Assembly: GCA_001179505.1 (NCBI GenBank)
Contig: CDMY01000274.1
Location: forward strand, 1-64,000
DNA length: 64,000 nt
DNA from: Vitrella brassicaformis CCMP3155
Taxonomy: Eukaryota; Protista; Chromerida
Direction of reading: 5' to 3'
Below are positions 8,015 through 52,161 of this stretch, piece after piece (position 1 is the first letter of the stretch; every line of letters starts with the position of its first letter). A model generated the notes under the pieces. That model searched no databases. It worked only from the letters and a program-made list of their open reading frames with translations, and was not told the origin of the DNA. The translations under genes were made by a program, and so were the position numbers.

Positions 8015-11000
8015 TCATCCTGCCCGTGTGCTGTGCCTTGCTGCATTGGCCAGCACATGTCTGGCCGCCCGCTGCCCCGACAGCCAGGCGCCCGTCACAC
8101 ACTGGTGGCCCTCGCGGGACGTCGCCTCACCTACCACCATCACCAATCAGGACATTCAACACCCTCCAGGCCACCTAGCTCGCCTGTGGCATGGGCTGCC
8201 TGCCTTGTGGTACCTGCTAGGGTGAGGTGTCCGTCGTATTCGGGCGACGACAGCTCCACAATGTCGGCCTCATCAGAACCCTGCACCAGTGACACATGAA
8301 TCCGGGTATCTCTCTCGGCGTCTGTGTGACACTGTGTGACCTACCTTTGCGATGTAGCTGTAGCTGCCGAGTGCCTCTGGTTCGGTGTCCCAGTGGGTGA
8401 CCTTCCAGTCCAACAGACGGGGCAACACATCTACGCCTTCACCCTTTAGATGTGCACACATAAAGAACACTGACGCACACATGCACACCTGAGCACGGCT
8501 CTTTGTGGTTGTGTTGGTGTGGTGTGTTGTGGGTACCAGGTGTTGCTGCAGGTGCTTGAACATGGCGCGAAGCACATCCAAACACTCGTCAACCACCTGA
8601 TCGGCGGACGCCAACACACACAGAGAAGACTTAGCTGAGAGAAGTACGGGCCACCCGTCCGTGTATCCCTGCCCACCGACCGACGGACGGACCTGTTTGT
8701 CGTCTTTGCCGCCGTATCCGATGGACAGCGGGGGGTACACTTGCACACACAGAGTGCCGCGCTTCCCTGCACACACGCACACGAAGACACACACAATGCC
8801 ACACACAGATGGATGGTCGGATGGATGAATGGATGGACACACCGGCCTCCCCTGTCAGCCAGCACACCGTATGGGTGTAGGTTGAGTATCTGCATGGGAT
8901 AGTCGGCCTTTGTGGTGGCGATGTTGACACGGCTGCCGTACTCACGCCAGAAGGGGTGCTCACTATTACCACTGCCATGGTCGGTGCGGCCTCCTCCGCG
9001 TGTGGTAGCGAACCGCAGGAAGATCTTGTTGTGTGTGCCCATCCCCAGCCGCCCGATGGACGCCCGCTTGGCCGCTGACAAAGGTGGATCGAACCTCACC
9101 AAACTGACACACACATATGCAGAGAGGCGTGGCAGGACGGCTGCAAATTGCAGCACAGGGTGAGGTGGGTCTTTACCTTCTCTGCAGTGTGTCGCTTTGG
9201 TCGATTTGGTGTTGTCTGCTGTGGCACTTGAGAGAGGCCTGCAGCACGCCGAGCGGCAGAGCGGCCACCACATACCGACAACGATAGACCTGGCACACAC
9301 ACACACACACACACACAGTCCATCCATCGACGCGTTCGGCTGTCCTCTGTCCGTTCCTCCCTCCCCTCTCACCTTCTTCGACGATTGTGAGGCGGGGGCC
9401 AGGGTGATCTCCATCTGGCCGTGCCTTCTGTCGGCGTGGTACGCCACTCTCGACACACGACAGCCGTAATGCACCTCACCACCTCCCTCCGCGATCTCGC
9501 CAAGCAGGGGCTCGATGACGAGCTTGCCGTACCCATTGGCTACCAGCCAATCGCTGCGTGTGTTGTTGGCCTCGTCCATGTCAGGCACTCGGTGGACAGC
9601 GAGAGAGCCGCTTGGCGGCGGCTTGTGGGCTTCGTCCAGGAGGTTGTCAGAGTGCTCCCGTAGGTACGCGTCTCGGTCGCTGGCGAGGAGGGCACTCTTG
9701 TCTGTGGCGGTGAGGCGCCTGGCGTGTTTGTCGCGGGCGCCTTGCGTGTCCGAGCCGAAGCGGTCCTGCCAGTCCACTGTACTGGTGGTGCCTGGGTGAC
9801 GACAACCGTGGCGTGCTGAACCCATCCGTCACACCCACCCAGCACACACACACAGACACAGAAAGAGGGAAAACGGTGAGCCATCTGTCGGTGGCTTTGC
9901 CTGTCTATCAGGTGGTCTGTCTTACCGTCCAGGTCGGCTGGCGTCGCGCACCTGCCCCACGAGCGCATCTTCATCTTGTCGATGATCCGCTCATCCATTT
10001 CATCCCAGTCGCCCGCGCCCCCGTAGCCCAGCCGCTGACGCACCACAGGCAGGTACTTGCGGAAGACACTCTCCAGGTCCGCCGCATTGTCGGCCATAGC
10101 CAAGCCACACGAGATGTCGCTGTGGTAGCTCCGGGCGCCTCTGTTTCTCTGACGGGCGGACGCGATGGCCTTGTCGCAGTCCATTGGCTGAGCATCCTCA
10201 CTGACACCAGCCTCCCCTCCGTGTGCCGGCTGCTGGTGCTGCTGCTGATGCTGCCCTTCCGACGCCCCCAAAGGCTGAGCGATGCCCCTTGAATCCGCGT
10301 TATCGTGCTGAGAAGCCTCCTTGTGTTGCTCTAGGTGCGCCATTGCCTGCCGCAGGCTGTCGCGGATGCCGGCGCGGGTGAATGGGCGCCTGACCAACCC
10401 GATGACAGCGTCGCCTAGCTTCCAACCGAGGTCCTTCCGCATGTAGGTCTTGTGCAAGGTCAGGGTGGGGTGGCCGTGTCGCTCCAGCTCCTCTCGGGCG
10501 AACTGCACCGCCCACTCGGTGTCCATCATCAGGTTTGGACCGTCATCGACGCTGTCCTCGCCAGCATCTCCCGGCTGCATGTCGACATCCATGGGCTCGG
10601 ACCTCTCAGCAGCAGCAGCAGCAGCAACAGCAACAGCAGCAGCAGCCTGGCTGCCACCACCATCGGCCCTGCGGTTGCACACCTGTCGACTGTCGGCCTC
10701 GTCAGAGAGGAACATGGAGTCCCGAAAGACGACGGCCAGCTGGACGCTCCGACGGAGGGAGGCAGGGGTCCATGGCCGTTCGACGGTCACGTAGAATCTG
10801 TGTTTGCCGGTGCTGAGGACGAATGTGAAGGACCACCGAATGACCTGGGCGTCAGGCCTCGAATTTGGTGAAATGCACGATGCTCGACCGCCCTCCGAGG
10901 CACGAATGGCCGACATCTCCTCCTGCAGAAACGCCAGCGCATTCTGGAAATCCAGCTTGTCGGCCTTCTTGTCCGACCCTTCGGCGTCCTTTCCCTCCCT

Positions 11001-14000
11001 CAGCTGGTCACGATACACCAACGCTGCCTTCAGGGAAGCCCGGACGCTGCGAAGGGTGAATGGCTTGGGCATCCGCAGTCTCCGCTCCTCCCCATCGCCA
11101 CCAGCGCTCTTCGGGAAGCGGATGACCCAATCCAGCTCACCCGGCCCGGACTTGGGGGGCCTGCCTGTGATTCCTGGCTTCTTTGGGGGAGGCGGGGCGA
11201 CCTTGCGCACTGACAGGAAGGTCGGGCGGCCCGGTGTCGCATCGCGGAGTCTCTCCAGCTCCTCGTTGGCTGCTTTCTTGGCCTCCTCCTGAGTCAGGGG
11301 CCGGTCTTGGCTGTCGTCGGCACGGAGCGCGAGTGCTGCCTGCAGGTCCCGTCGCATGGATTCCCTCGTCAGCGGGGGCCGCACTGGATGGGAAAGATGC
11401 ACAGGCGGCCTCTCCCCCCAACCAGGCAAATCGACAGTGGATGACAGGCCCGGGAGCGACCTGCCGGCCTTGGACTCGTCGGTGGTGACTCCACCTCGAC
11501 GCTGCCGATTTTTGCGGAGCAGCTGGCGCTCGTCTCGGCACACTGCAGGAGTCTCATGGATACTCATGGACACGTCGTCCCCTCCATCGACAGAAGGAGC
11601 AGCAGCAGGCGCGCACCCACTGCCCGCTTCATCGACGCCCTCGGCCGGCTCACCAAGTGCCGGCTGGCCGTCTCCACCGCCTCCCTGGTGACCACCGGTA
11701 TCAGTACCATCATGCTGTCTCTTCTCTTTTGACGTCATGGTGGAAGGGGCGTCGCGCTGTGCTGCAGGAGAACGAGATGGGGATGTATTGCGCCTGCTGG
11801 CGGCCTTGGTGGGTCGGCTGGTGTTGTCTGGGCCGCTGTTGTCTGCTTCTCGTGCCTCGGCCTCGCCCCTGCGTCTGATTTTGTCTCGGTGTGCGATGGC
11901 GGTGGCGAGGTTGTTGCGGATGGAATTGAGGCACCACGGCTCGTAGATGGTGAAGTCCTTGGTGGTCCGCTGGCCGCTGTTGTAGACCTGCACCCGCAGA
12001 TACAGCACCCGCGCCGCGTTGTGGAGGAGAATGATGGACACAGGCTGCCCGGTCGAGGTCCGCAACCGCTGCAGCTCCGCCTGAGTGATGGATATCGTCT
12101 TCTCCCGAGACAGCACCTCCTCGCCATCTCTCGAGGCATACTGCGGCAACAGCTGCTCGCTGATCTCCCTGCGCCTCTGGTCGTCGTCAGACCCCTCGCT
12201 GCTGAGCTCGCGTGCTGCTACAGCCGACGCCCTCTTGGCTTTGGCCTTTCTCCTGGCGCCCTGCCGCCTCTTGCTGCCGTTGCGCCTCTTGCGTCCACCA
12301 GCCGGTGGGCTGTGCTGCTGCCCTTCGTCGGTGTTGGAGCCGTCTTTGCTCTTGGCGGCCTTCTCGGCGGCGTGGCGGCTGAGCATGGCCTGGCGGTGGT
12401 CGAGTGCCTTCTCGAGGGCTGCACGGATGGACTGCTGGGTGAATGCCCATGGCGGCACGTTGACCGTCTTGCGGTCTCGGTGACCATCGCGCACCATGTC
12501 AATGCTCCAGAGGAAGGACTCCTTGCCTGTGGGGACCACAAGGGACATGTTCCTGAGCCGCCCCTGACGAGCCAGCTCCTGCCGAGCGAATGCCACCGCT
12601 TCGCTGCGGGTCATGCTGCCGTTGCGGCCGTCGTCTGATGGATTGTTGGAATGGCCCTCCTCGGGGACCTGGCTGCTGTGGTGGTTGCCGCTCCTGCTGC
12701 TGCTGTCCTCACTCATTTCGCCGCTGCCGTCGTCGCTACTGTTGTCATGGAACTGCCGGCGGGATTGACGCTTGGAGCGGCTCCGGCTGCGGGACCCCTG
12801 CCGTGTGGCGATGGCATGCCGACGGGCGATCATGGCCTCGCGGTTGGCCATGGCCTCACGCAAAGACTCGCGGACCGACTGCGCCGTCCACGGGGGTGAG
12901 ACCGACAGCGTCTTGCTGAGCCGCTCGGTGCCCCTGGCCAAGTGGACCGTCAACCTGAATGCCTCCCTGCTGCTGGGCACTTCCAGCCACAGATTCTTGG
13001 GCCTGCCATGACGATCCAACTCCGCACGAGCAAATGCGATGGCCTCCTCGCGTGTCATGGTGCCGTCAGCCCCATTGCCCTCCTCCCCCTCCTCCCTGCC
13101 CTGGATGTCGCCGTCGTCCATCTCGTCCTCATCCTTTGCGAGTGACTCGACATTGTCCCCCTCGGATGAACGACGCCGCTTCTTGCCCGCAGCTGCTGGC
13201 TTCTCCTCTGCAGAAGCTGGCGGTGGGGGGGGCTGTGGCGTGCGNNNNNNNNNNNNNNNNNNNNNNNNNNNNNNNNNNNNNNNNNNNNNNNNNNNNNNNN
13301 NNNNNNNNNNNNNNNNNNNNNNNNNNNNNNNNNNNNNNNNNNNNNNNNNNNNNNNNNNNNNNNNNNNNNNNNNNNNNNNNNNNNNNNNNNNNNNNNNNNN
13401 NNNNNNNNNNNNNNNNNNNNNNNNNNNNNNNNNNNNNNNNNNNNNNNNNNNNNNNNNNNNNNNNNNNNNNNNNNNNNNNNNNNNNNNNNNNNNNNNNNNN
13501 NNNNNNNNNNNNNNNNNNNNNNNNNNNNNNNNNNNNNNNNNNNNGCCAGGCCGCAGCTGATGTCGCTGTGGTAGACATCAGGCAGCGGCAGCACTGACGT
13601 CACGGTGGCCGGGGCGTCCCGCTGTGCTGCAGGGGGACGAGATGGGGATTTATTGCGCGTGCTGGCGGCCTTGGTGGGTCGGCTGGTGTTGTCTGGGCCG
13701 CTGTTGTCTGCTTCTCGTGCCTCGGCCTCGCCCCTGCGTCTGATTTTGTCTCGGTGTGCGATGGCGGTGGCGAGGTTGTTGCGGATGGAATTGAGGCACC
13801 ACGGCTCGTAGATGGTGAAGTCCTTGGTGGTCCGCTGGCCGCTGTTGTAGACCTGCACCCGCAGATACAGCACCCGCGCCGCGTTGTGGAGGAGAATGAT
13901 GGACACAGGCTGCCCGGTCGACGTCCGCAGCCGCTGCAGCTCCGCCTGAGTGATGGATATCGTCTTCTCCCGAGACAGCACCTCCTCGCCATCTCTCGAG

Positions 14001-17000
14001 GCATACTGCGGCAACAGCTGCTCGCTGATCTCCTTGCGCCTCTGGTCGTCGTCAGACCCCTCGCTGCTGAGGTCGCGTGCTGCTACAGCCGACGCCCCCT
14101 TGGCTTTGGCCTTTCTACTGGCGCCCTGCCGCTTCTTGCTGCCGTTGCGCCTCTTGCGTCCGCTGGCCGATGGGCTGTACAGCTGCCCTTCGTCGCTGTT
14201 GGAGCCGTCTTTGCTCTTGGCGGCCGTCTGAGCGACGTGGCGGCTGAGCATGGCCTGGCGGTGGCCGAGTGCCCTCTCGAGGGCTGCACGGATGGACTGC
14301 TGGGTGAAAGGGGGCGGCACGTTGACCGTCTTGCGGTCTCGGTGGCCATCGCGCACCATGTCAATGCTCCAGAGGAAGGACTTCTTGCTTGTGGGGACCA
14401 CAAGGGACGTGTTGGTGAGCCGCCCCTGACGAGCCAGCTCCTGCCGAGCGAAGGCCACCGCTTCGCTGCGGGTCATGCTGCCGTTGCGGCCGTCGGCTGA
14501 TGAATTGTCATGGCCCTCCTCGGGGCCCTCGCTGCTGTGGTTGTTGCCGTTCCTGCTGCTTTCCTCACTCATCCTGCCGCTGCCGTCGTCATCGGACTCG
14601 AAGGGCTTTGGGCTACTGCGGTCATGGAACTGCCGGCGGGATGGACGCTTGGAGCGGCTCCGGCTGCGGGACCCCTGCCGTGTGGCGATGGCGTGCCGAC
14701 GGGCGATCATGGCCTCGCGGTTGGCCATGGCCTCACGCAAAGACTCCCGGACCGACTCCGCCGTCCACGGGGGTGAGACCGACAGCGTCTTGTTGAAGCG
14801 GTCCTTGCCCTTGACGAAGTTGACCGTCCACCTGAAGGCCGCCCTGCTGTTGGGCACCTCCAGCCACAGGTTCTTGGGCCTGCCGTGACGATCCAACTCC
14901 GCACGGGCAAATGCGATGGCCTCCCTGCGCGTCATGGTGCCGTCAGCCCCCTTGTCCTCCTCCCCCTCCTCCCTGCCCTGGATGTCGCCGTCGTCCATCT
15001 CGTCCTCATCCATTGCCAGTGACTCGACATTGTCTCCCTCCGTTGGACGACGTCGCTTCTTGCCCGCAGCTGCTGGCCTCTCTGCAGCGGCACCAGCATC
15101 GGCGGCAGGTGGACATGAGTTGGGGGCGAGGGGGGCCGGTGGTGGGTCCGACATGGCAAGGATGGTGCTGCTGCCGGCAAGGAGAGGGGATGCATCTGGC
15201 GGTGGGGGCGGCTGTGGCGTGCGACCAGCGCTCCCGGCAAGGGGTGTCTTGTTGCTGCTGTTCTGCTTTGGCGGCTCGCTGCTTGGGTCGCCCAAGGGCT
15301 CGCCGATGGAACCGCGGCGCGACCCCTCCCTGTTGACGGTCTCGGCCGACCGCACGACGTCATCCCGGTAGGCGATGGCCTTCTTGAGGCTGGCACGGAT
15401 GGATGCTGCACTCCACGGCGGTTGGATCTCGAGGTGCTTGGCGTGCCGCTTGCCCTTGCCCATCTTGACATCGACGAACCAGTCGACTCGCTTCCTGTCC
15501 TTGCCAGCAGAGACCGAGATCAGCAGGGGCCGGGTCTCGGACTCACGCAGACGCTGCAGCTCCCGACGACACAGTGCGATCGCATCGGCCATCGACAGCG
15601 GCTCATCCTTGTCGCCGTCATTGCAGCCCATGTCGACGTCCTCTGTCTGCTCGCGGGGCTGCGGAGCGGGAGGGGGAGGCGGAGGCGGCGACTCGCTGCG
15701 ACCGCCGCTCGATGACGGTGACCTGCTGGGTTTGGCGGAGCGCGACATGGGTTCTTCGAAGTCCTCGTCATCCTGGAGGGCCATCAGCTGGTCCCTGTTT
15801 GCGACGGCCTCGCGGAAGGACTCCTTGACGCCCCTCGGCGTGTAGGGCCTCGGCACACGCTTGCCCTTCTGCGCGCCGCCCGCACTCCGCGGCATCCGTA
15901 TGAGCCACCTGAACACGGAACACGACAACAGACAGGCCAATGCATTCATTAAGGGGTCCATGTACATGTCATGTATGTGGCCAGCAAAGCCTTTGTCCTG
16001 CTCTGCTTACTCGAGGCCTCGTTTGTCTACGTTGGTCTTCCGCAGCGACACGTAAGATGGGCCGCCACCGTTTTCGTCCCGCAGGCGGGCGACCTCCTGC
16101 TCTGCCAGGCGCATGGCCTCGTCCACGTTGAGCTGCCGGTCCTCCCGATCCCCATGGTCGTCGATGTCCATGGCATTGCTGTCCGCATCCTGCCCCCCAT
16201 CCACTGACCCCTCGAGTGTGCCGCCCTTTGCCACCTGGCGGCGCTTCTTGACCCGCGGCTGGCGAGACCCATCATCCGACAACACGGGAGAGGGGCCGTG
16301 TCCCACCTTGCTGAGGGCGTGCTTGAGGCTGGCGCGGATCCGGTGAGCCGTGTAGGGCTCGTCGATGCGGACGAAGTGCGTCTCTGCCTCGGCATCGTCG
16401 GTCATGATCTCCCAGAAGAGGCTCCTCTTGCCCTGCTGGCTGGTGGCGATGTGCAGCGAGACGGGCAGGGGGTCCTCCCCTGTCTGCTGTGCCATCCGCT
16501 CCAGCTGCTGCTCGCACACCTCTATGGCCCCGTCGGTGGACAGGACGTTGCTGTTGGTGCTCTTCCTGCTGGGGGCGCTGCTGGCGGCGTCTGCCTCATC
16601 CTCGACGCATCCCAGGTCGAAGTCCCGCTTGGTGTTGCGCTTGGTCGGCCGCCGCTGCGGCAGCTGGCTCACCGCCTCATTGCTCTGGCTCACCGCGACC
16701 AGGTGACGCATGGTGTCGCGGTGAGAAAGAGCACTCTGCAGGGCCTCGTGCACCGAGTGGACGCTGTGCGGCTCGCACAGCTTGAAGCTCTTCTGCCGCT
16801 GGGCCACCACCACCCTGAAGGCCATCTTCTTGGCGTGGAAGTTGATGCTCGTCGACTGCTTGGGGACAAAGGCCTTGAGCCGAGTTGACAGCCGCTGTGC
16901 CAACGCTATGGCAGCGTCGCGGGAGAGGGCTGTTGTGCCTGGCGCGTGGCGTGGGCTGATGGTGGTCTGGCCGTCATGCCCTGCCACCATGTCCTTGTGG

Positions 17001-20000
17001 GCGCCAAGGCTGTCTGCCCGCCGCTCTCCCGAATGTGTGCTGGCCGGCGGTGCCTCCCCCATATGGACACCATCCGCACACCGATGGCCAGCATCACACA
17101 CCACACCGTTGGCAGCCCGGCCAGCACTAATGTGCTCCCGCATCGCCAGACACACCTCCACCGCCACACGGACGCCATCCAACGTGGGAGGCGCGATGGA
17201 CACCAGCTCGCGACGGCTGTTGGGGCCCTCAGAGTCGGGGGTGACGTACAACTGGCGAGTGGTCGAGTCGAAGCCGATGAGAGGGGGCGAGTGGGTCTCT
17301 GTTGATTGCGGCAGGTGGTTGAGGGCGTCCACACATGCCCGCTCCAGCTCCTGGGGTGTGAGTGCAGGAAGGGGCGGCTGGGGGGGAGGCGACGCAGCTG
17401 CACAGAACCCAAGACACACACACGGCAAAAGTGTAAGTAAGCAGGTGTTGGAGGGGGGGGGTTCCTGTACTTGGGTTACCGATGAAGGCGCTGGATGCGG
17501 TGGAAGAGGCGGCAACAATGCCACGGCCCCTCTCGGTGGATGTGCTATGCTGGTATTGCTGCGGCTGTGAGTCCATTGAGGCCATGGCATGGTCGAGCAG
17601 ACCGCCTTCTGCTGGCCGCCCCCCTCCGTGGCTGCCCTCCTCCCAGCTCATGCTGTCCGTCTTGTCCACGGCTTCCCCACCCGCACCACTGATGTGCCCA
17701 TCGTCCTTGGCTGCAGCCGGCACTGCCTCTACACGTCGGCTCGCGGCCGCCCTGTCCCTGTTGCGCATGTACTTGGTCACGTACGCCCTGACGCCGTTGA
17801 CGGAGCGGGAGGGGATCTCCCGCTGGATGGCCTCCCAGTCAGGGCCCAGCTTGTCGAACAAGGCCCACACACGCCGACGCTCACCCTCGCTCCACGAGTT
17901 GCTCGACCCACGCCACTTGATCGACTCGCGCAGCTTGCGGCGTGCCTCGACGGCCCGCTGCAGCGTCGCCCGCACGCCCTCGACCGTCCTGGGCTCGATG
18001 AGGATGCGCTGAGTGGCAGCGCCCGTCATGGACACGCAAATTTTGTTGCAGTCTTTGCTCAGGTGGATGTGGAGCGGCTCGCCCGGCTGGCTGCTCTGAC
18101 GAAGCTTGTCCAGCTCGGCCCCGCAGACGGCCGACAGGGCCGCTGGGGACAGCTCCTCGGATGGCGATGGCGAGGCAGACGTGGGAGGTGGGTGGGCTTC
18201 GGCGTGTGGGAGTGAAGGGTGTGAGGGCTGTGAAGTGCGGCCGCCACTGCGTGAGGGCGGGCGCGCCTTGCGCTTGGCCGGTCGGCTACGGGGGGCTGAT
18301 GGGGGGCTGGGGCTGGGGGAGGGCGGACGCAAGATGAGAGCTGACGATTTTGGAGCGCCCCCACAGAACAGAGCACTTGTAAGTTTCGCTGCCTTGCTGT
18401 GGTTGTTGGCGTGTGTGTCTTACCGAGTAGGTGTGCGATCTCATCTTTGTGTTGTTTCCATTGCAGTATCTCGTGACGCCGGGTGGTCTCGGGGGCAGCA
18501 GCACTGCCAGTGGCAGCGGATGGCTCGTTGGGGCGGTGGTGGTGGTGGTGTGGGTCATCGGGTGTGCACACCCGTCCGGTGGTGTGTTGGCTGCCGATGG
18601 CGAGGTCGTACTGTCTGTGCATCAGGGTGGGGGGTGTCTGCTGCCACAGGGGATGCTTCTGACACGGATTGAACTCGTGACGAGCTGAACACACATTCAC
18701 CACACACACACACACACACACACAGGCAGGCAGGCAGGCAGGCATAGAGACGATGAGGGCCAACATGCCTCTGTGGTCATGTATTTTGGCACCTACGCAC
18801 CTCTCTGTTTGATCTCTTGTACGACTGCCCTGAAGACCAGGTCACACTTGGCCACCTTGACGGGGTCCACACGCGTCCCGCTGCCCACATCCATGAAGGT
18901 GGCGGTGTCGCACGGCTCGCTCACGCCCTCCCGTCCAGGCACCCAGGCCAACCTGTGGCCCTGCTTGACGGCCAGCGTCATCAGCACATTGCTATCATGG
19001 TCGGCCGCGCCACACCCGTGGATGTAGTTGGCCCCCAACTCTACCATCACGCAATCCTCCTTGGCTGCTGCTGCTCCTGCACCAGCACCAGCACCAGCGG
19101 CACCAGTGGATGCTGCTTGGTCAGCGGAGGATGCGCTGGCCTGCAATGGGTGCGTGTGCGTGGGTGTGCCGGCGAGTGTGTGTGATCGGATGCGGCCGCC
19201 GGCCTGGTCACGGGCCTCGAAGACGGCGATGCGCAGGTTGGCAGCCAAACAGTCGCGGGCCGCCACCAAACCTGCGGGAGGCACGCAAGGATGGAAGGAA
19301 AAAGTCATGCACGTCGGATGATGCACGTCTGGTGCTCCCTCCCTCCCTCTTGTAAACCGCCCTCCCCCCACCCACCAGCAGTGCCGGCTCCAATGACAAT
19401 CACATCGTAGTCACACGGAGCACTCGAGGCGCCACTGCCTCCTCCTCCTCCTCCTCCCATGGCCGCTCTCACCGCCCGTCGCCTCTTGCTTTCTTGTGCG
19501 CGTGATCGGCTGCCCTGTGTGGGTGTCTGTGCGTGTGGGGCGAGGAACAGCTGCCGCAGGTGTTGGTCCATGCAGGACGGGCGGAGGGCGTCACGGTTGA
19601 AGGCAATGCAGCTCGCCTCCTGACAGACAGACACAGTCAGCCAGTGATATAATGGATCAACCAACAGTCGCACCAGGGAAGGGCGAGATGTGGGTGTGGG
19701 TGTAAGGGCGAGATGTGGGTGTGGGTGTTTCTGTGTGTTAACTATGTGTGTCGGTTCCTTACTGACCCGTGGCCCAAAGAACCGCACACACTCTAGGTCG
19801 TGACGCCTGCAGGCGTCATCGAATGTCGGGTACGGCCTGACACACAACACAACACAACACAACACAAGACAACACAGGACAGGACAGGACAGGCGAGGTT
19901 CCTTCTCTTCTTTCCTCCCATAGATCTGTGTGTGTCACCCACCCATAGATGTTTTCGTATCCGTTGATGAGTAGGCGGGCCCAGAAACCGTCGTGCTCGA

Positions 20001-20198
20001 CGTCATACAGAATGCGCCAGTCTGCTTAAAGGCAAACAAGCACACCACACACACAAAGACGATATGGACAGGCAACGACCACCACACCGCTGGCATCAAT
20101 GACTCCCCCTGGCACCTGCGTGTGGGACGGGAACATGTCCAGACACGACGCCTATCTGCTTCAGCAACTGACGAAGAGCTGCTAACGCCTCTGGGGGA

Positions 20199-20236
<38 letters not shown>

Positions 20237-20591
20237 CGACCAACCGACATGCACAGACATGAACACATCCACATGCCCCCGCCAACCACCCTCCCTTCCT
20301 CCCTCCCTCCCTCCTTCCACCTCTCCTTCAGCGCACCTCACCTTGGCGGGTCGATGGCATTCTATCTGGAGTTGTCGCAACCACCATCCTTGGATCCTCC
20401 GTTGCCTGGCGGTCGGTCTCCCCTCCACCCCCTGCTGCTGCTGCTGCCGCTACCGCTGCCGGGCGGCTCTCGTATGCATCGCGCTGCTCGTGTGTCTGAC
20501 AACCTCCTACATGACCACGGGCCGATAGATAGATGGGCGCGATGGACGCGCCAGTGGTGCAACCAGCCGGGCCGTCCATCGACTCATCCAT
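8015..20591 (-). CDS. Flavin-containing amine oxidase (LSD1/polyamine-oxidase-like), split by a huge insert of AP2-like repeats and a SANT/Myb domain, with an N-terminal AP2-like domain; multi-exon; possibly two tandem paralogs separated by the gap
   Basis: The FAD motif DVIVIGAGTAG|LVAARDC..VFEARDQAGGRIRS..VELGANYIHG lies at ~19410-19020. The C-terminal half lies at ~10130-8015: DWLVANGYGKL, VRFDPPLSAAKRASIGRLGMGTHNKIFLRF, WKVTHWDTEPEALGSYSYIAK, HLTLAG|EATSREGHQCVTGAWLSGQRAARHVL, then TGA at 8015-8017. Start is MDESMDG at 20591. Confidence 0.8.
11725..15225 (-). repeat. Tandem duplication of ~1.5-1.6 kb (13595-15225 vs 11725-13244) flanking an assembly gap
   Basis: Both copies encode the same three repeat units (MTR(R/E)EAIAFARAELDRHGRPKNLW.., MTRSEAVAFARQELARQGRL.., LSREKTISITQAELQRLRTSTGQ..). 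They are near-identical over the third unit and more diverged over the first two. Confidence 0.9.
13245..13544. other. Assembly gap (300 N)
   Basis: N run. All four gaps in the window are exactly 300 N, so this is a placeholder size. Confidence 0.99.
17735..17900 (-). other. SANT/Myb-like domain inside the amine oxidase insert
   Basis: WSEGERRRVWALFDKLGPDWEAIQREIPSRSVNGVRAYVTKY fits the Myb/SANT pattern W(T/S)xEE..L......G.dW..I...lp.Rs....r. Confidence 0.75.
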
Positions 20592-20793
20592 GGGGAATCA
20601 GCAAGATCACACCACGACAGAGGGCCAACTCAGGTGGCGTGCGATTGTCAGCCCGCCCATCTCCTTGATTCAAAAGCTCGCACCAACGTAAAAACGGAGG
20701 AGGCGGATCTGGAACAGGTGTCAGCACTGTGACCCTGGACAACACTCCTGAGCCAAGTAGTGAATCTCCCTTCATCCATCCCCGCACAATGGC

Positions 20794-21708
20794 ATGATGG
20801 CATTGCTGCTGCGTCGGCTGCCCTGCTCGTCCCCCTCCCTTCTTGGACACACCGCACGCCGCCCTTTGGCTCCTCTCCATTGCCGCTTCTCGTCAACAGC
20901 GAGTGAGGCTGGTCAATCCAGCAGCCAAAGCACCGGCTTGCTGGTGTCTGTCAGCAAGAGTAAGGACAGCACCATCAGCGTCATCTCACTGCAGCGGCCA
21001 GAGGCCAAGAACGCCATCAGCAGCGCCTTGCTATACGACCTGAGCAATGCAGTCGAGTCGGTGCGCCACGACGAGCAGACGCGGGCCGTCATCGTCCGCA
21101 GCCGAGTGCCGCGTGTCTTTTGCGCCGGCGCCGACCTCAAGGAGCGCGCCAAGATGAGTGAGAGCGACGCCCGTGTGTTTGTGTCGAAGCTGCGCGCGTC
21201 CATGACGGCCATCGACCGGCTGCCGCAGCCCACCATTGCCTGCATCGACGGGGTGGCCCTCGGCGGTGGCCTCGAGCTGGCGCTGGCCTGCGACTTCCGC
21301 ATCGCCAGCCCATCGGCCGTTGTCGGCCTCCCTGAGACCTCGCTGGCTATCATTCCTGGTGCAGGAGGGACACAGCGGCTGCCGAGGCTGGTGGGGCTGC
21401 AGCGGGCCAAGTTCCTCATCTTGACGGCTCAGCGGCTCAAGGGATCCGACGCGCTTACCTGGGGCATGGTGGACTTCGTCACTGGCGAGAACGACCACTG
21501 GCTTGTCGACCCAAACGACAGCAGTAAGGGCGATCAAGGGGCGTCTGGGGCGATGACCGAGTTCGACGCCATGTTTGAGAGTGAGAGGGCCGACGAGTGG
21601 CCCGCCGTGTGCGCGGGGATTCGGCTCGCCAAGATGATATCTGCGCAGGTGTGGCATGACAGCACGTAGAAGCCAAGATGGATGACCTTGATCAATCAGG
21701 CGGGCCGG

Positions 21709-24724: not shown

Positions 24725-25024
24725 NNNNNNNNNNNNNNNNNNNNNNNNNNNNNNNNNNNNNNNNNNNNNNNNNNNNNNNNNNNNNNNNNNNNNNNNNNNN
24801 NNNNNNNNNNNNNNNNNNNNNNNNNNNNNNNNNNNNNNNNNNNNNNNNNNNNNNNNNNNNNNNNNNNNNNNNNNNNNNNNNNNNNNNNNNNNNNNNNNNN
24901 NNNNNNNNNNNNNNNNNNNNNNNNNNNNNNNNNNNNNNNNNNNNNNNNNNNNNNNNNNNNNNNNNNNNNNNNNNNNNNNNNNNNNNNNNNNNNNNNNNNN
25001 NNNNNNNNNNNNNNNNNNNNNNNN
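24725..25024. other. Assembly gap (300 N)
   Basis: N run. Confidence 0.99.
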
Positions 25025-41914: not shown

Positions 41915-44159
41915 ATGGAAGGCGATGGCAAGCAGACGGCTCTTGTGATGCGCGAATCGGTCGGCCGCACTCACTGCATCGCTCTGTGCTGTCATCTGGC
42001 GCACATGCCCGTCTGTCTGTCTGTGATTGTTTGCTTCACTCACTCAGACGTTTGGCGTCGGCCTCGATGAGCTTCAGCGACGCATCGATGACATCCACAC
42101 ACACATCACACAGGTCACACACACACACAGACAGAGGAGGAGAGAGAGAGATGTTGCAGCCCGCTGTGTTGGTGTGGGTCATGTGTGCACATGTCAGATA
42201 TCACGTGAGGCCTCAGAGGTGCAGGAGCTCTTCAACACGACAATCGCAGCACAGGTCAACCACACGCCAGCACACGACAGCACAGCGCAACCCATCAAGC
42301 TGACGTCACTCTGTGCCTCATGATTGTGTGTCTGTGCGATTGGTTCAGACGCCTCTGGTCAGTCAGGATTGGCCTGGCGTGTTTGCGGCTCTCTCGTCGG
42401 CTGCCGAAGGTCTGCGTGTGATTCGAGAGGGCGTCAAGGGCACCTGTCGGCCCGTCGGCTGGGCAGCGCCGAAGAAATCGGCCAACATCGCCTCAGCTGA
42501 CGGACTACTGCCGCCCGATGTGGTGTGGCGTCGCGACATCTACCCGATGCTGTCAGTGTGTGAGGCTGTCTGCTCGGCCCGCCCCACCAGCAAGACATAC
42601 GGCACTCAGGTCGTCGACGAGACCTTCATGCTCGCGCGCATTGACAAAGACCTCGCCCGCCACTCGCTCACGNNNNNNNNNNNNNNNNNNNNNNNNNNNN
42701 NNNNNNNNNNNNNNNNNNNNNNNNNNNNNNNNNNNNNNNNNNNNNNNNNNNNNNNNNNNNNNNNNNNNNNNNNNNNNNNNNNNNNNNNNNNNNNNNNNNN
42801 NNNNNNNNNNNNNNNNNNNNNNNNNNNNNNNNNNNNNNNNNNNNNNNNNNNNNNNNNNNNNNNNNNNNNNNNNNNNNNNNNNNNNNNNNNNNNNNNNNNN
42901 NNNNNNNNNNNNNNNNNNNNNNNNNNNNNNNNNNNNNNNNNNNNNNNNNNNNNNNNNNNNNNNNNNNNNNNNCGCCCGCCACTCGCTCACGGGACTCATT
43001 GACATACAGCGGCCCACCACACCCACACCACCAGCAGCAGACACCGACCCCCTCCCCCCCTTCCCCGCCCCCCAGACACACACACAGCCCACCAGCGATC
43101 CCCCCACGCCAGCCGACCGTATCCGGCGGTTTCGCTATCTGTCGGCGTGCGCCTATGTGCTTGAGCAGGGAGGTGGGGTGTGGCAGGAGATGGCCGACTT
43201 CATTCGTGTGGCGGCCATCTACAAGCTGACGGGCGATGGTCTGCCTCTGGTGCTGTCGCCTCAGTGGATGGCCGACCACCTGGCCACCAAGGCGGCCTTC
43301 GATGAGCTGCCTCTCGCCCTGGCTATCTACAACACATTCGGACACTTGCTCAGCTACCAGGGGACCACCTTAGAGCTGCGGCGGGTGGATGACGATACCG
43401 ATGACAGCGATCAGGACAGCGACAGTGATGGCGACGATGAGGACATGGAGGGGGCAGGCAGTGATCAAGATGAGGACATGAACGAGCAGGGGGATGAGGA
43501 GGGATCTGACGAGGAGGGTGCAGAGGACCGCTCAGTCTGGAGCGAGCCAGAGGGGCAGCATGGCGCCGGAGAGGAGGTCGAGGGAGAGGCTGCGGGGGGC
43601 GACAGAGGGCAGCCTGGCGGTGGCGGTGGTGATGTGACGAGACAGCGCTACAGGATCGGCGATATGGACTTCACGACGGTCCCCCTCACTGACCTGCCCC
43701 CCACCCATCCCTGTCGTCGCACATACACCCCAGACGACCCGCCCATTGGCTGGATTTACTTTCTCTGCCGACCCTTCACGGCATTCATCGAGTGGATGGT
43801 CCTGGCGCAGTGGTGTCGTCAGGAAGGGCGTTGAGAAGAAGCGGGTGCTGTATGCTGATGTCGGCCTTGACGACACTCGCTATCTGTCCCTGCTGACGGA
43901 GCCCATCGAGGGCCACAAGACCATCGACCATATGGATCAGCAGGGACAAGGTAGCCGCCGGCGATACATCATCCTCAAGGGCACCGAGGCAACCGACACC
44001 ATTGTGGCCCACCTGTGGCTGGTCGATGGCTCCATCTACCTCTACACGACCGAGGCGCCGATTGAGGGCAACACGGCCATCGAGCGCTTCCCAGTTGCTG
44101 TGGCGGCCGCCCGACCTCTGCTGACCAAATATGGGCTGGAGCGGGCAGTTCTCGGATAG
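41915..44159 (+). pseudogene. Lineage-expanded F-box-like family, copy 2; +1 frameshift near 43828 (pseudogene or sequencing error)
   Basis: LLPPDVVWRRDIYPML..RIDKDLARHSLT|GLIDIQRP..YVLEQGGGVWQEMADFIRVAAIYKL. CAG GAA GGG CGT TGA stops the frame, while the homologous GVEKKRVLYADVG..YTTEAPIEGNTAIERFPVAVAAARPLLTKYGLERAVLG* continues in another frame to 44159. The start at 41915 is tentative. Confidence 0.7.
42673..42972. other. Assembly gap (300 N), probably spurious
   Basis: The 19-mer cgcccgccactcgctcacg is present on both sides of the gap. Confidence 0.9.
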
Positions 44160-51861: not shown

Positions 51862-52161
51862 NNNNNNNNNNNNNNNNNNNNNNNNNNNNNNNNNNNNNNN
51901 NNNNNNNNNNNNNNNNNNNNNNNNNNNNNNNNNNNNNNNNNNNNNNNNNNNNNNNNNNNNNNNNNNNNNNNNNNNNNNNNNNNNNNNNNNNNNNNNNNNN
52001 NNNNNNNNNNNNNNNNNNNNNNNNNNNNNNNNNNNNNNNNNNNNNNNNNNNNNNNNNNNNNNNNNNNNNNNNNNNNNNNNNNNNNNNNNNNNNNNNNNNN
52101 NNNNNNNNNNNNNNNNNNNNNNNNNNNNNNNNNNNNNNNNNNNNNNNNNNNNNNNNNNNNN
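51862..52161. other. Assembly gap (300 N) flanked by poly-C tracts
   Basis: N run with ~26 C on the left and ~20 C on the right. Confidence 0.99.

What the first reader, a model, noticed from the sequence alone, without database searches (positions are those of the whole stretch)
8015..20591. Amine oxidase/LSD1-like enzyme carrying its own array of DNA-binding-like modules
All FAD and catalytic motifs I can check look intact: GAGTAG, ELGANYIHG, the lysine in GMGTHNKIFLRF (equivalent to LSD1 GFGNLNKVVLCF), GSYSY and GEAT..VTGAWLSG. The two halves are separated by ~8.5 kb encoding ~14 repeat modules and a SANT/Myb domain, and an AP2-like domain is at the N-terminus. Canonical LSD1 has a SWIRM domain and recruits SANT via CoREST on its Tower insert (established). 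I see no SWIRM here; SANT and putative DNA-reading modules are fused in cis within the oxidase. Inference: a self-targeting chromatin demethylase, and the best candidate for an undescribed system in this window.
Basis: partly seen in the sequence, partly recalled or inferred. Interest (0 to 1): 0.88.

Follow-up and report, generated by a model that had tools for sequence, protein, structure and literature searches.

The report
Amine oxidase split by AP2-fold modules
In the alga Vitrella brassicaformis, a flavin amine oxidase really does carry a Myb domain and a string of AP2-shaped, probably DNA-binding, modules inside its catalytic domain, but the 14-module gene seen here is two related genes wrongly joined at an assembly gap.

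Summary
The window is Vitrella brassicaformis scaffold CDMY01000274.1.

**What holds.**

**The gap.** The letters on the two sides of 13245-13544 are not continuous.
- The right side (13545 upward) overlaps the end of another contig, CDMY01000772.1, by 158 bases at 100% identity.
- That contig carries its own complete C-terminal oxidase half, a stop codon and different downstream genes.
- Contigs from four public runs show the same joint.

**The two genes.**
- Gene A is my reconstruction: 2,414 aa, 9 modules plus Myb in the insert.
- Gene B is only a 3' fragment (13244 down to 8015): 7 modules plus the C-terminal oxidase half.
- The annotated 3,446-aa protein is a chimera of the two.

**The modules.** They fold confidently (pLDDT 91). 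Their strands-plus-helix core matches AP2 and integrase-arm DNA-binding domains. No Pfam AP2 match was found, and the only relative among 1.84 billion proteins is a second Vitrella protein.

**The oxidase.** It is a divergent PF01593 member. There is no SWIRM domain, and kinship with LSD1/LSD2 rather than polyamine or monoamine oxidases is not settled.

A chromatin-tethered demethylase is plausible but inferred. No transcript evidence was obtained. The scan holds at least 8 unchecked notes of similar fusions elsewhere in this genome.

The parts
20342..20387 (-). Gene A exon 1; start codon at 20387
   Evidence: The annotated gene ends at 20387. The donor is GTGAGG.
20116..20190 (-). Gene A exon 2; N-terminal helix of the candidate N-terminal module (M0)
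   Evidence: GT-AG splice model with an open frame.
19943..20024 (-). Gene A exon 3; the strand part of the AP2-like N-terminal domain (DWRILYDVEHDGFWARLLINGYENIYG)
   Evidence: No Pfam AP2 match after splicing. hhalign against the module profile is marginal: score 17, against a shuffle maximum of 12.8.
19767..19836 (-). Gene A exon 4; the helix part of the AP2-like N-terminal domain (PYPTFDDACRRHDLECVRFFGPR)
19376..19619 (-). Gene A exon 5; low-complexity linker with KRRR, then DYDVIVIGAGTAG (GxGxxG)
18801..19271 (-). Gene A exon 6; N-terminal FAD-binding part of the oxidase (EARDQAGGRI, ELGANYIHG)
   Evidence: Pfam Amino_oxidase 1.8e-8 and NAD_binding_8 3.3e-8.
18424..18684 (-). Gene A exon 7; bridging exon with no recognised domain
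   Evidence: This is the only acceptor that keeps the frame. No Pfam match.
17480..18295 (-). Gene A exon 8; module M1 (17919-18152) and the Myb/SANT repeat (about 17745-17924)
   Evidence: Pfam Myb_DNA-binding 24.7 bits. PDB c-Myb repeat R3 at 4e-6. Module alignment.
16011..17397 (-). Gene A exon 9; modules M2 (17129-17362), M3 (16709-16927), M4 (16304-16543) and the first half of M5
13545..15908 (-). Gene A exon 10, cut by the gap. It holds the second half of M5, M6 (15356-15598), M7 (14708-14935), M8 (14249-14476), M9 (13742-13978), and the first residues of the C-terminal oxidase half (VYHSDISCGLA at 13545-13576). It continues on contig CDMY01000772.1.
   Evidence: L004:1-158 is 100% identical to 13702-13545. 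The joint is seen in 4 runs. The M6 model has pLDDT 91.
13245..13544 (.). Assembly gap (300 N) that wrongly joins gene A (right) to gene B (left)
9924..13244 (-). Gene B, one open exon whose 5' end is missing. It holds M7' (12831-13058), M8' (12384-12614), M9' (11877-12113), a degenerate M10 (11322-11543), M11 (11001-11297), M12 (10713-10955), M13 (10323-10526), and the start of the C-terminal oxidase half (SYHSDISCGLA from 10130).
   Evidence: A single open frame from 13244 to 9924. Modules. 11730-13244 is 92% identical to 13595-15223.
8015..9923 (-). Gene B C-terminal oxidase exons (at least 7). They carry DWLVANGY (9529-9552), the lysine of GMGTHNKIFLRF (about 9025-9027), GSYSY (8354-8368), GEAT..VTGAWLSG (8075-8131) and the stop codon (8015-8017).
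   Evidence: tblastn of P0122 maps every exon. Pfam Amino_oxidase. DNA is 78-88% identical to gene A's copy.

Best explanation
**Structure.** The locus holds parts of two paralogous Vitrella genes, fused by a scaffolding error at the gap.

Gene A runs from window 20387 to 13545 and then onto contig CDMY01000772.1. My spliced reconstruction is 2,414 aa, made up of:
- a small AP2-like helix–strands–helix domain;
- the FAD-binding N-terminal part of a flavin amine oxidase;
- a roughly 1,600-residue insert;
- the C-terminal oxidase half.

The insert holds nine modules of about 75 residues, one Myb/SANT repeat, several KRRR-type basic patches and low-complexity linkers. Each module is an AP2/integrase-arm type three-stranded sheet plus helix, preceded by an extra helix.

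Gene B is seen only from its seventh-module equivalent onward (13244 to 8015). It has seven modules in the same position and its own intact C-terminal oxidase half.

**Likely function (inferred, not shown).**
- A nuclear, chromatin- or DNA-tethered FAD amine oxidase.
- The mostly basic AP2-fold modules and the Myb repeat place the enzyme on nucleic acid or nucleosomes.
- The oxidase then removes methyl groups from lysines (LSD-type chemistry) or oxidises another chromatin-bound amine.
- The built-in readers would take the role that SWIRM and Tower–CoREST play for LSD1.

**Confidence by part.** Two genes and the chimera, about 0.9. AP2-type fold of the modules, about 0.75. Chromatin-directed demethylase function, about 0.35.
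For: **Organism and annotation.** The neighbouring gene is 100% identical to a V. brassicaformis CCMP3155 protein. The annotated product is 3,446 aa and ends at 20387.

**Chimera.**
- A 92% duplication abuts both gap edges.
- The coding frames are out of register across the gap.
- The joint 10098->13545 appears in 4 of 4 runs, including an environmental metagenome. Both variants at 10038 and 10068 have about equal depth: 34.8 of 76.8, 10.4 of 31.9 and 5.38 of 10.5.
- P0122 begins with the last 53 residues before the gap and continues to a stop codon. Different genes follow it.

**Gene model.** Ten exons, all GT-AG, with no internal stop. In both paralogues the modules and the start of the C-terminal oxidase half share one exon.

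**Oxidase.**
- Pfam Amino_oxidase at 92 bits on P0122, and N-terminal-half matches.
- The catalytic lysine is invariant in 45 of 45 homologues.
- A-versus-B dN/dS is about 0.25 on conserved exon parts.

**Modules.**
- Alignment. AF2 pLDDT 91, topology H-E-E-E-H.
- ESM Atlas shape search: the top rows are AP2 (PF00847), HNH_3 and integrase-arm clusters, TM 0.5-0.6, rmsd 2.0-3.1 Å over residues 17-87.
- AFDB clusters: four entries with A0A0G4 accessions, three of them named AP2/ERF, TM 0.66-0.83. I take these for chromerid proteins from the accession series, which is my own knowledge; the tool gave no organism.
- Swiss-Prot: XisA, XisC and integrase N-terminal domains.
- 7 of 9 modules have pI 9.4-11.6.

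**Myb repeat.**

**LSD resemblance.** The best PDB sequence match is LSD2 at 9e-14. The best fold matches are LSD1 at Z 30 and LSD2 at Z 28.8.
Against: - No transcript evidence. The two probable RNA runs hold only 0.05 of the sampled words. The laid runs were assembled contigs of unrecorded kind, and nothing marks them as RNA.
- No Pfam AP2 match for the modules or for the N-terminal domain.
- VIA-align against the PDB gives only generic helix–sheet matches with Z below 7. Foldseek against the PDB is not significant.
- No SWIRM domain.
- The oxidase is no closer to LSD than to other amine oxidases. Bacterial monoamine oxidases score 69 bits. Atlas feature hits are polyamine/spermine-oxidase-like. 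The Z gap between LSD and polyamine/monoamine oxidases is about 3, on a model that lacks the N-terminal half and has mean pLDDT 70.
- The tyrosine equivalent to LSD1 Y761 is Gly-His in both paralogues.
- dN/dS across the duplicated module segment is 0.64.
- Gene B's 5' end is unknown.
Confidence: 0.55

Rival explanations
1. A metabolic polyamine or monoamine oxidase. The long insert would be a lineage-specific spacer or protein-interaction region with no role in reading DNA or chromatin.
For: The closest sequence matches in the large database are bacterial flavin monoamine oxidases. Atlas feature matches are fungal and chordate polyamine/spermine-oxidase-like clusters. PAOX, SMOX and Fms1 match by sequence at 1e-10 to 1e-7. 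There is no SWIRM domain. The module segment is under relaxed constraint, with dN/dS 0.64.
Against: The Myb/SANT repeat, the KRRR-type patches and the mostly basic AP2-fold modules point to the nucleus and to nucleic acid. LSD1 and LSD2 are the top fold matches.
Confidence: 0.25
2. The modules bind RNA or proteins rather than DNA. Helix–3 strands–helix is also the topology of dsRNA-binding domains and of type III secretion chaperone-like domains.
For: The top Foldseek PDB row is a dsRNA-binding motif, at E 0.18. A DRBM protein appears in the AFDB clusters. VIA-align's top rows are type III secretion chaperones at Z 5-6.5. Modules M2 and M4 are acidic.
Against: Those matches have TM 0.2-0.35 or a generic Z below 8. 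Clusters labelled AP2 or integrase-arm give TM 0.5-0.83 with rmsd 2-3 Å.
Confidence: 0.15
3. It is one gene after all. The duplication would be a real internal tandem repeat, and contig CDMY01000772.1 would be redundant or mis-assembled.
For: The scaffold and the public annotation join the two sides into one 3,446-aa product. The duplicated blocks are only 92% alike, so both exist in the genome.
Against: - The sequence beyond 13545 runs in frame through a full C-terminal oxidase half to a stop codon, followed by about 10 kb of unrelated genes in the stretch fetched.
- Four runs carry that joint.
- The two C-terminal halves differ with dS about 0.3 and have different 3' ends.
- The frames do not match across the gap.
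Confidence: 0.04
4. One or both copies are unexpressed, decaying duplicates, and the architecture has no present function.
For: The two probable RNA runs hold almost none of the sequence. No transcript contig was found in JGI collections. The region is rich in paralogous variants (loose ends).
Against: There is no stop or frameshift across 2,414 codons of gene A, nor across gene B's 1,107-codon exon and its C-terminal exons. dN/dS is below 1 in both compared segments. The joint is also present in an environmental population (run X11).
Confidence: 0.1

Closest known systems
LSD1/KDM1A and LSD2/KDM1B (FAD-dependent histone lysine demethylases)
   Same: Both have the flavin amine oxidase fold with the conserved catalytic lysine. 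LSD2 is the best solved-structure match by sequence, and LSD1 and LSD2 are the best by predicted fold. Both have a large insertion in the oxidase domain in the region between the FAD subdomain and the substrate-subdomain helices. Both have a SANT/Myb-type domain working with the enzyme; LSD1 gets its SANT domains in trans from CoREST, bound to the Tower (domain bounds from PMC6320820).
   Different: There is no SWIRM domain, no Zn-CW, and no two-helix Tower. The insert is about 1,600 residues of AP2-fold modules, and in my alignment it appears to sit one helix upstream of the Tower site. The tyrosine equivalent to LSD1 Y761 is Gly-His. Sequence similarity to LSD is no higher than to polyamine or monoamine oxidases.
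Polyamine, spermine and bacterial flavin monoamine oxidases (PF01593)
   Same: The Pfam family is the same, and bit scores are similar or higher. The predicted fold matches at Z 26-27.
   Different: In the proteins I aligned, those enzymes are compact, about 450-500 residues, with no insert at this point and no DNA-binding-type domains. That this holds for the family as a whole is my own knowledge.
AP2/ERF and ApiAP2 DNA-binding domains, and the arm-type DNA-binding domains of tyrosine integrases
   Same: All share a three-stranded antiparallel sheet packed on a C-terminal helix. A conserved Trp sits in strand 2, and most modules are basic.
   Different: The Pfam AP2 model does not detect them. 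They carry an extra N-terminal helix. They occur as 7-9 tandem copies inside an enzyme. Among 1.84 billion representative proteins, the profile finds only one other protein, the Vitrella module-only protein P0121.
c-Myb R3 / SANT repeats
   Same: A single repeat matches Pfam Myb_DNA-binding at its gathering threshold, and matches c-Myb repeat R3 in the PDB.
   Different: It is a single repeat embedded between modules M1 and M2 of an oxidase insert. Whether it is a Myb-type (DNA) or SANT-type (histone tail) repeat was not resolved.

Membership tests
Flavin amine oxidase (Pfam PF01593) | N-terminal dinucleotide-binding motif (GxGxxG ... EA.d..GGR) | tested here: met
   DYDVIVIGAGTAG|LVAARDCL...VFEARDQAGGRI. 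Pfam NAD_binding_8 3.3e-8 and Amino_oxidase 1.8e-8.
Flavin amine oxidase (Pfam PF01593) | C-terminal substrate and FAD parts match the family profile above its gathering score | tested here: met
   P0122 (gene A) scores 92.1 bits against a cutoff of 19.8, covering profile positions 185-443. All of gene B's exons map to it.
Flavin amine oxidase (Pfam PF01593) | Conserved active-site lysine (LSD1 K661 equivalent) | tested here: met
   K335 of P0122 is invariant in 45 of 45 aligned homologues. It is also present in gene B (GMGTHNKIFLRF).
Flavin amine oxidase (Pfam PF01593) | Aromatic residue before Pro in the C-terminal GEAT..[YF]P.TV.GA motif (LSD1 Y761) | tested here: not met
   Both paralogues read SREGHQCVTGA. 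The homologues have Y (21) or H (10) followed by P (23) at these columns. The functional consequence is unknown.
LSD1/LSD2 histone demethylases | SWIRM domain directly N-terminal to the oxidase domain | tested here: not met
   No SWIRM match in the ORFs and exon translations scanned. Exons 1-3 were scanned only as part of the spliced 68-residue peptide. Only about 60 low-complexity residues lie between the N-terminal helix–strands–helix domain and GxGxxG.
LSD1/LSD2 histone demethylases | Oxidase domain groups with LSD rather than with polyamine or monoamine oxidases | tested here: inconclusive
   By PDB sequence: LSD2 54 bits, PAOX 44, LSD1 29. By fold: LSD1 Z 30, LSD2 28.8, monoamine oxidase 27.2, PAOX 26.8. 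Against this, bacterial monoamine oxidases score 69 bits and the Atlas features are polyamine/spermine-oxidase-like. No phylogeny could be built because the reference sequences were not obtainable.
LSD1/LSD2 histone demethylases | Tower coiled coil (LSD1 residues 416-515) or Zn-CW finger (LSD2) | tested here: not met
   The insert consists of globular helix–3 strands–helix modules and linkers. No zinc-finger match was found. The insertion point is near the Tower site but not shown to be at it (domain bounds from PMC6320820).
LSD1/LSD2 histone demethylases | Demethylates methylated histone lysines | not testable with these tools
   This needs an enzyme assay.
AP2/ERF DNA-binding domain (PF00847) | Match to the family's sequence profile | tested here: not met
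   No AP2 match at E up to 10 for four modules, for P0121, or for the spliced N-terminal peptide.
AP2/ERF DNA-binding domain (PF00847) | Three-stranded sheet plus C-terminal helix fold | tested here: met
   The AF2 model has pLDDT 91 and topology H-E-E-E-H. The nearest Atlas shapes are AP2, HNH_3 and integrase-arm clusters, TM 0.5-0.6, rmsd 2.0-3.1 Å. AFDB entries named AP2/ERF match at TM 0.66-0.83.
AP2/ERF DNA-binding domain (PF00847) | Binds double-stranded DNA through the sheet | not testable with these tools
   Support is indirect only: a conserved Trp in strand 2 and basic pI in 7 of 9 modules.
Myb/SANT repeat (PF00249) | Profile match at the gathering score | tested here: met
   24.7 bits against a cutoff of 24.4 on the exact exon 8 translation. 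c-Myb repeat R3 in the PDB at E 4.3e-6.

The most novel reading that the evidence does not exclude
Vitrella has evolved a family of amine oxidases that aim themselves. Arrays of AP2-fold DNA readers and a Myb/SANT repeat are built into the catalytic domain and replace the SWIRM and Tower–CoREST apparatus of LSD1. One polypeptide would then read DNA sequence or chromatin and demethylate histones there: a transcription factor and an eraser enzyme in one protein, with module number changing quickly between paralogues.
Probability: 0.25. Interest if true: 0.8.

Novelty: new variant of a known kind. Interest (0 to 1): 0.55.

Why it matters
**If the function holds.** Histone demethylases of the LSD type are normally brought to their targets by partner proteins. 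An oxidase that carries many AP2-fold modules and a Myb repeat inside its own catalytic domain would be a direct, testable case of an eraser enzyme fused to sequence readers. It would sit in the closest free-living relatives of apicomplexan parasites, whose gene regulation is dominated by AP2 factors.

**The modules.** They are a confidently folded, apparently lineage-restricted offshoot of the AP2/integrase-arm fold.

**Practical point.** The public 3,446-aa protein model for this locus is a chimera. It should not be used for domain counts, phylogeny or structure work.

Tried and rejected
- **Annotated protein not retrieved.** The 3,446-aa model could not be fetched. The length window of the search for homologous proteins excluded it, and the representatives search did not return it. 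I built the gene A model by hand instead.
- **Metagenome and transcript scans.** An exact 31-mer at the gap edge and the YHSD exon as a protein query both found nothing.
- **PDB sequence searches with single short exons.** These gave nothing useful.
- **N-terminal AP2-like domain.**
  - Pfam on the spliced 68-residue peptide found nothing.
  - hhalign against the module profile was marginal.
  - It could not be folded, because spliced sequences are not accepted by the structure tool.
- **Transcript proof.**
  - The second run search lists only two probable RNA runs, each holding 0.05 of the words.
- **Mapping the insert onto LSD1's Tower through the P0122 model.**
  - The tool reports only overall ranges.
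  - The N-terminal 210 residues of the model have low confidence.
  - An alignment with 10 homologues places the junction after the helix that follows the FAD-subdomain beta-meander.
- **Allelic-haplotype explanation for the duplication.** Rejected. The 3' flanks are unrelated, dS reaches 0.3, and both forms have equal depth in the three runs labelled with the culture organism.
- **Search for gene B's 5' part.** tblastn of gene A against the whole window found no further copy. Look-ups in the scan's notes by sequence were blank.


Full report
**Where we are.** The gene next door on the plus strand (20794-21669) is 100% identical to an enoyl-CoA hydratase of Vitrella brassicaformis CCMP3155. 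The window is the first 64 kb of scaffold CDMY01000274.1 of assembly GCA_001179505.1. There, one minus-strand gene ending at 20387 is annotated with a 3,446-aa product carrying Amino_oxidase and NAD_binding_8 matches. GC content is 60-66% across the locus. Introns are short and rich in TG/CA repeats.

**The observation.**
- Pfam finds Amino_oxidase and NAD_binding_8 in the exon at 18801-19271 and Amino_oxidase in the C-terminal exons.
- The Myb/SANT call holds. It scores 24.7 bits against a gathering score of 24.4 on the exact exon translation, and the best PDB matches are c-Myb repeat R3 at E 4e-6.
- The repeat modules are real. I located 13 distinct copies of 68-99 residues plus three near-identical duplicates, with 34% mean column identity and a shared pattern.

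**The gap.** This was to be tested first, and it changes the picture.
- All four gaps in the window are exactly 300 N, so I take the length for a placeholder.
- The 1.5 kb left of the gap (11730-13244) is a 92% copy of 13595-15223 on the right.
- The module reading frames on the two sides are one base out of register.
- The last 32 bases before the gap on the right (13545-13576) encode VYHSDISCGLA. This peptide recurs at 10097-10130 with many synonymous differences.
- I laid contigs of four public runs on 10000-15400. Three runs carry the label of the culture organism and one is a marine sediment metagenome. Every run has a contig that joins 13545 to a variant of 10098-10000.
- At the two diagnostic positions (10038 and 10068) both variants are present at about equal depth: 34.8 of 76.8, 10.4 of 31.9 and 5.38 of 10.5. 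Only the gene A-type variant was seen in the metagenome run.
- The source of that variant turned up in a protein search. P0122 is a 528-aa 'partial' Vitrella protein at the end of contig CDMY01000772.1.
- P0122's first 53 residues are identical to the translation of 13702-13544, and the DNA overlap of 158 bases is 100% identical.
- P0122 then continues through a complete C-terminal oxidase half to a stop codon. A Peptidase_C1 gene, an AMP-binding gene and a ketosynthase gene follow it. None of these resembles anything in the window.

**What the gap result means.** There are two genes.
- Gene A's 5' two-thirds lie at 20387-13545, and its 3' end lies on the other contig.
- Gene B is seen only from 13244 down to its stop codon at 8015.
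- The two C-terminal halves are 78-88% identical in DNA, introns included. They have dS about 0.30 and dN/dS about 0.25 over the conserved exon parts, an estimate biased downward by how I chose the columns.
- The duplicated module block has dS 0.09 and dN/dS 0.64.
- Gene B's 5' part is not in this window.

**Gene A model.**
- Reading the splice sites by eye and checking by script gives ten exons in the window. All have GT-AG borders and together contain no stop codon.
- Joined to P0122, this gives 2,414 residues: an N-terminal domain (about 16-100); a low-complexity stretch with KRRR; GxGxxG at 165-173; the N-terminal oxidase part to 329; an insert at 330-1921; and the C-terminal oxidase half at 1922-2414.
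- The insert carries module M1, the Myb repeat, and modules M2 to M9, separated by Ser/Pro/Gly/Ala-rich linkers of 55-158 residues with further KKRR-type patches.
- In both paralogues the last modules and the first 60-70 residues of the C-terminal oxidase half lie in one uninterrupted exon. The array therefore cannot be a separate gene on that side.
- On the N-terminal side the link depends on two introns that I could not verify with RNA. The two probable RNA runs hold only 5% of the sampled words.

**The modules.**
- An AlphaFold model of M6, built with 18 sister modules as its alignment, is confident: pLDDT 91, pTM 0.80, topology helix–strand–strand–strand–helix.
- Foldseek against solved structures gives nothing significant. 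VIA-align gives only generic two-layer matches with Z below 7.
- Three libraries of predicted structures agree on what the strands-plus-helix core resembles:
  - ESM Atlas shape search: the first rows are clusters carrying PF00847 (AP2) or the AP2-associated HNH_3, and tyrosine-integrase arm-type DNA-binding domains, at TM 0.5-0.6 and rmsd 2.0-3.1 Å over residues 17-87.
  - AFDB clusters: four entries with A0A0G4 accessions match at TM 0.66-0.83 over the whole module, three of them named AP2/ERF. I take these for chromerid proteins from the accession series; the tool gave no organism.
  - Swiss-Prot: the top matches are the N-terminal domains of XisA, XisC and phage integrases.
- A language-model feature search also lists an AP2-bearing set, but weakly.
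- Against this, the Pfam AP2 model does not see the modules, nor the spliced N-terminal domain.
- A profile of the modules, searched against 1.84 billion representative proteins, finds one protein only: P0121. This is a 1,652-aa Vitrella protein on another contig with six modules and no oxidase.
- I therefore call the module a lineage-restricted derivative of the AP2/integrase-arm fold with an added N-terminal helix.
- Seven of gene A's nine modules are basic, and a Trp in the second strand is widely conserved. DNA binding is inferred, not shown.
- The N-terminal domain has the same predicted order of elements and an AP2-like sequence pattern, but its similarity to the module profile is marginal.

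**The oxidase.**
- It belongs to PF01593: 92 bits on the C-terminal half. The catalytic lysine is conserved in all 45 aligned homologues.
- It has no close relative outside Vitrella. The best hits in a database of 5.8 billion sequences are bacterial flavin monoamine oxidases at 69 bits and 25-32% identity, and the only protein named LSD-like scores E 1.8e-4.
- Among solved structures the order by sequence is LSD2 (9e-14), PAOX and SMOX (1e-10), Fms1 (7e-8), LSD1 (4e-6).
- A model of P0122 (mean pLDDT 70, good from residue 210 on) aligns best with LSD1 (Z 30) and LSD2 (Z 28.8). A bacterial monoamine oxidase (27.2), PAOX (26.8) and maize PAO (26.7) follow closely.
- Atlas features point to fungal and chordate polyamine/spermine-oxidase-like clusters.
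- No SWIRM domain, Zn-CW or coiled-coil Tower is present. These are the features that define LSD1 and LSD2 (PMC6320820).
- In the C-terminal FAD motif, the aromatic residue equivalent to LSD1 Y761 is replaced by Gly-His in both paralogues.
- In an alignment with ten homologues, the module insert falls after the helix that follows the FAD-subdomain beta-meander. A second, roughly 95-residue insert follows a little later.
- From my own reading of the LSD1 sequence, the module insert is near the Tower site, probably one helix upstream of it. Exact equivalence is not shown.

**Interpretation.**
- Firmly shown: two paralogues, a mis-joined scaffold, an oxidase interrupted by AP2-fold modules and a Myb repeat, and no SWIRM.
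- Inferred: the nucleic-acid-type domains, the basic patches and the (slightly) LSD-leaning fold suggest a nuclear enzyme that tethers itself to DNA or chromatin and oxidises a chromatin-bound amine, most attractively methyl-lysine.
- Still open: a polyamine or monoamine substrate, RNA or protein binding by the modules, and poor expression.

**Context.**
- The scan's own notes list at least eight other loci in this genome described as AP2 domains fused to LSD1/PAO-type oxidases, one of them with an insert 'at about the Tower position'. I could not check them. If they are right, this is a gene family rather than a one-off.
- I found no paper describing such a fusion in the searchable library, including the chromerid genome paper, which does not mention demethylases or amine oxidases.

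**Limits.**
- The laid runs are assembled contigs, not raw reads, and their kind is not on record.
- No RNA evidence was obtained.
- Spliced sequences could not be sent to the structure tool.
- No LSD or PAO reference set was available for a tree.

Noticed in passing
L003:249-6621 (contig CDMY01000649.1), protein P0121: A second Vitrella protein (1,652 aa) carries six or seven tandem copies of the same helix–3 strands–helix module, in a more AP2-like sequence variant, with acidic linkers, no oxidase and no significant Pfam domain (best E 7.7e-4, below cutoff). It is the only relative of the modules found among 1.84 billion representative proteins.
   Followed up: partly
window 11311-11560 and 8811-8840: In run X6, a contig matches 11311-11560 exactly and then continues with 30 bases identical to 8811-8840, a CCATCC-rich intron stretch. 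Runs X1 and X5 have contigs that run straight through 11560. This may mark a further copy of the M10 region, or a repeat-mediated variant.
   Followed up: partly
window 11609-11611, 12709, 11102, 14950: Contigs in runs X5 and X11 run off into more than 250 bases that match nothing in the window or in the fetched loci. This hints at additional paralogous copies or strain variants of the module array.
   Followed up: partly
window 13245-13544, 24725-25024, 42673-42972, 51862-52161: All four gaps are exactly 300 N, so I take the lengths for placeholders. After the mis-join found at the first gap, the other three joins in this scaffold deserve the same check.
   Followed up: no
window 20388-20793: Gene A and the enoyl-CoA / methylglutaconyl-CoA hydratase gene are divergently oriented, with about 400 bases between their start codons. 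This may be a shared bidirectional promoter.
   Followed up: no
L004:3124-11173: Downstream of gene A's true 3' end lie a Peptidase_C1 gene, an AMP-binding gene and a ketoacyl-synthase/PP-binding gene. This may be a small polyketide or fatty-acid cluster.
   Followed up: no
run X11 (marine sediment metagenome), joint 10098->13545: An environmental metagenome carries the gene A-type junction and parts of the array at 96-100% identity. I infer that near-identical Vitrella-like organisms occur in marine sediment samples.
   Followed up: no
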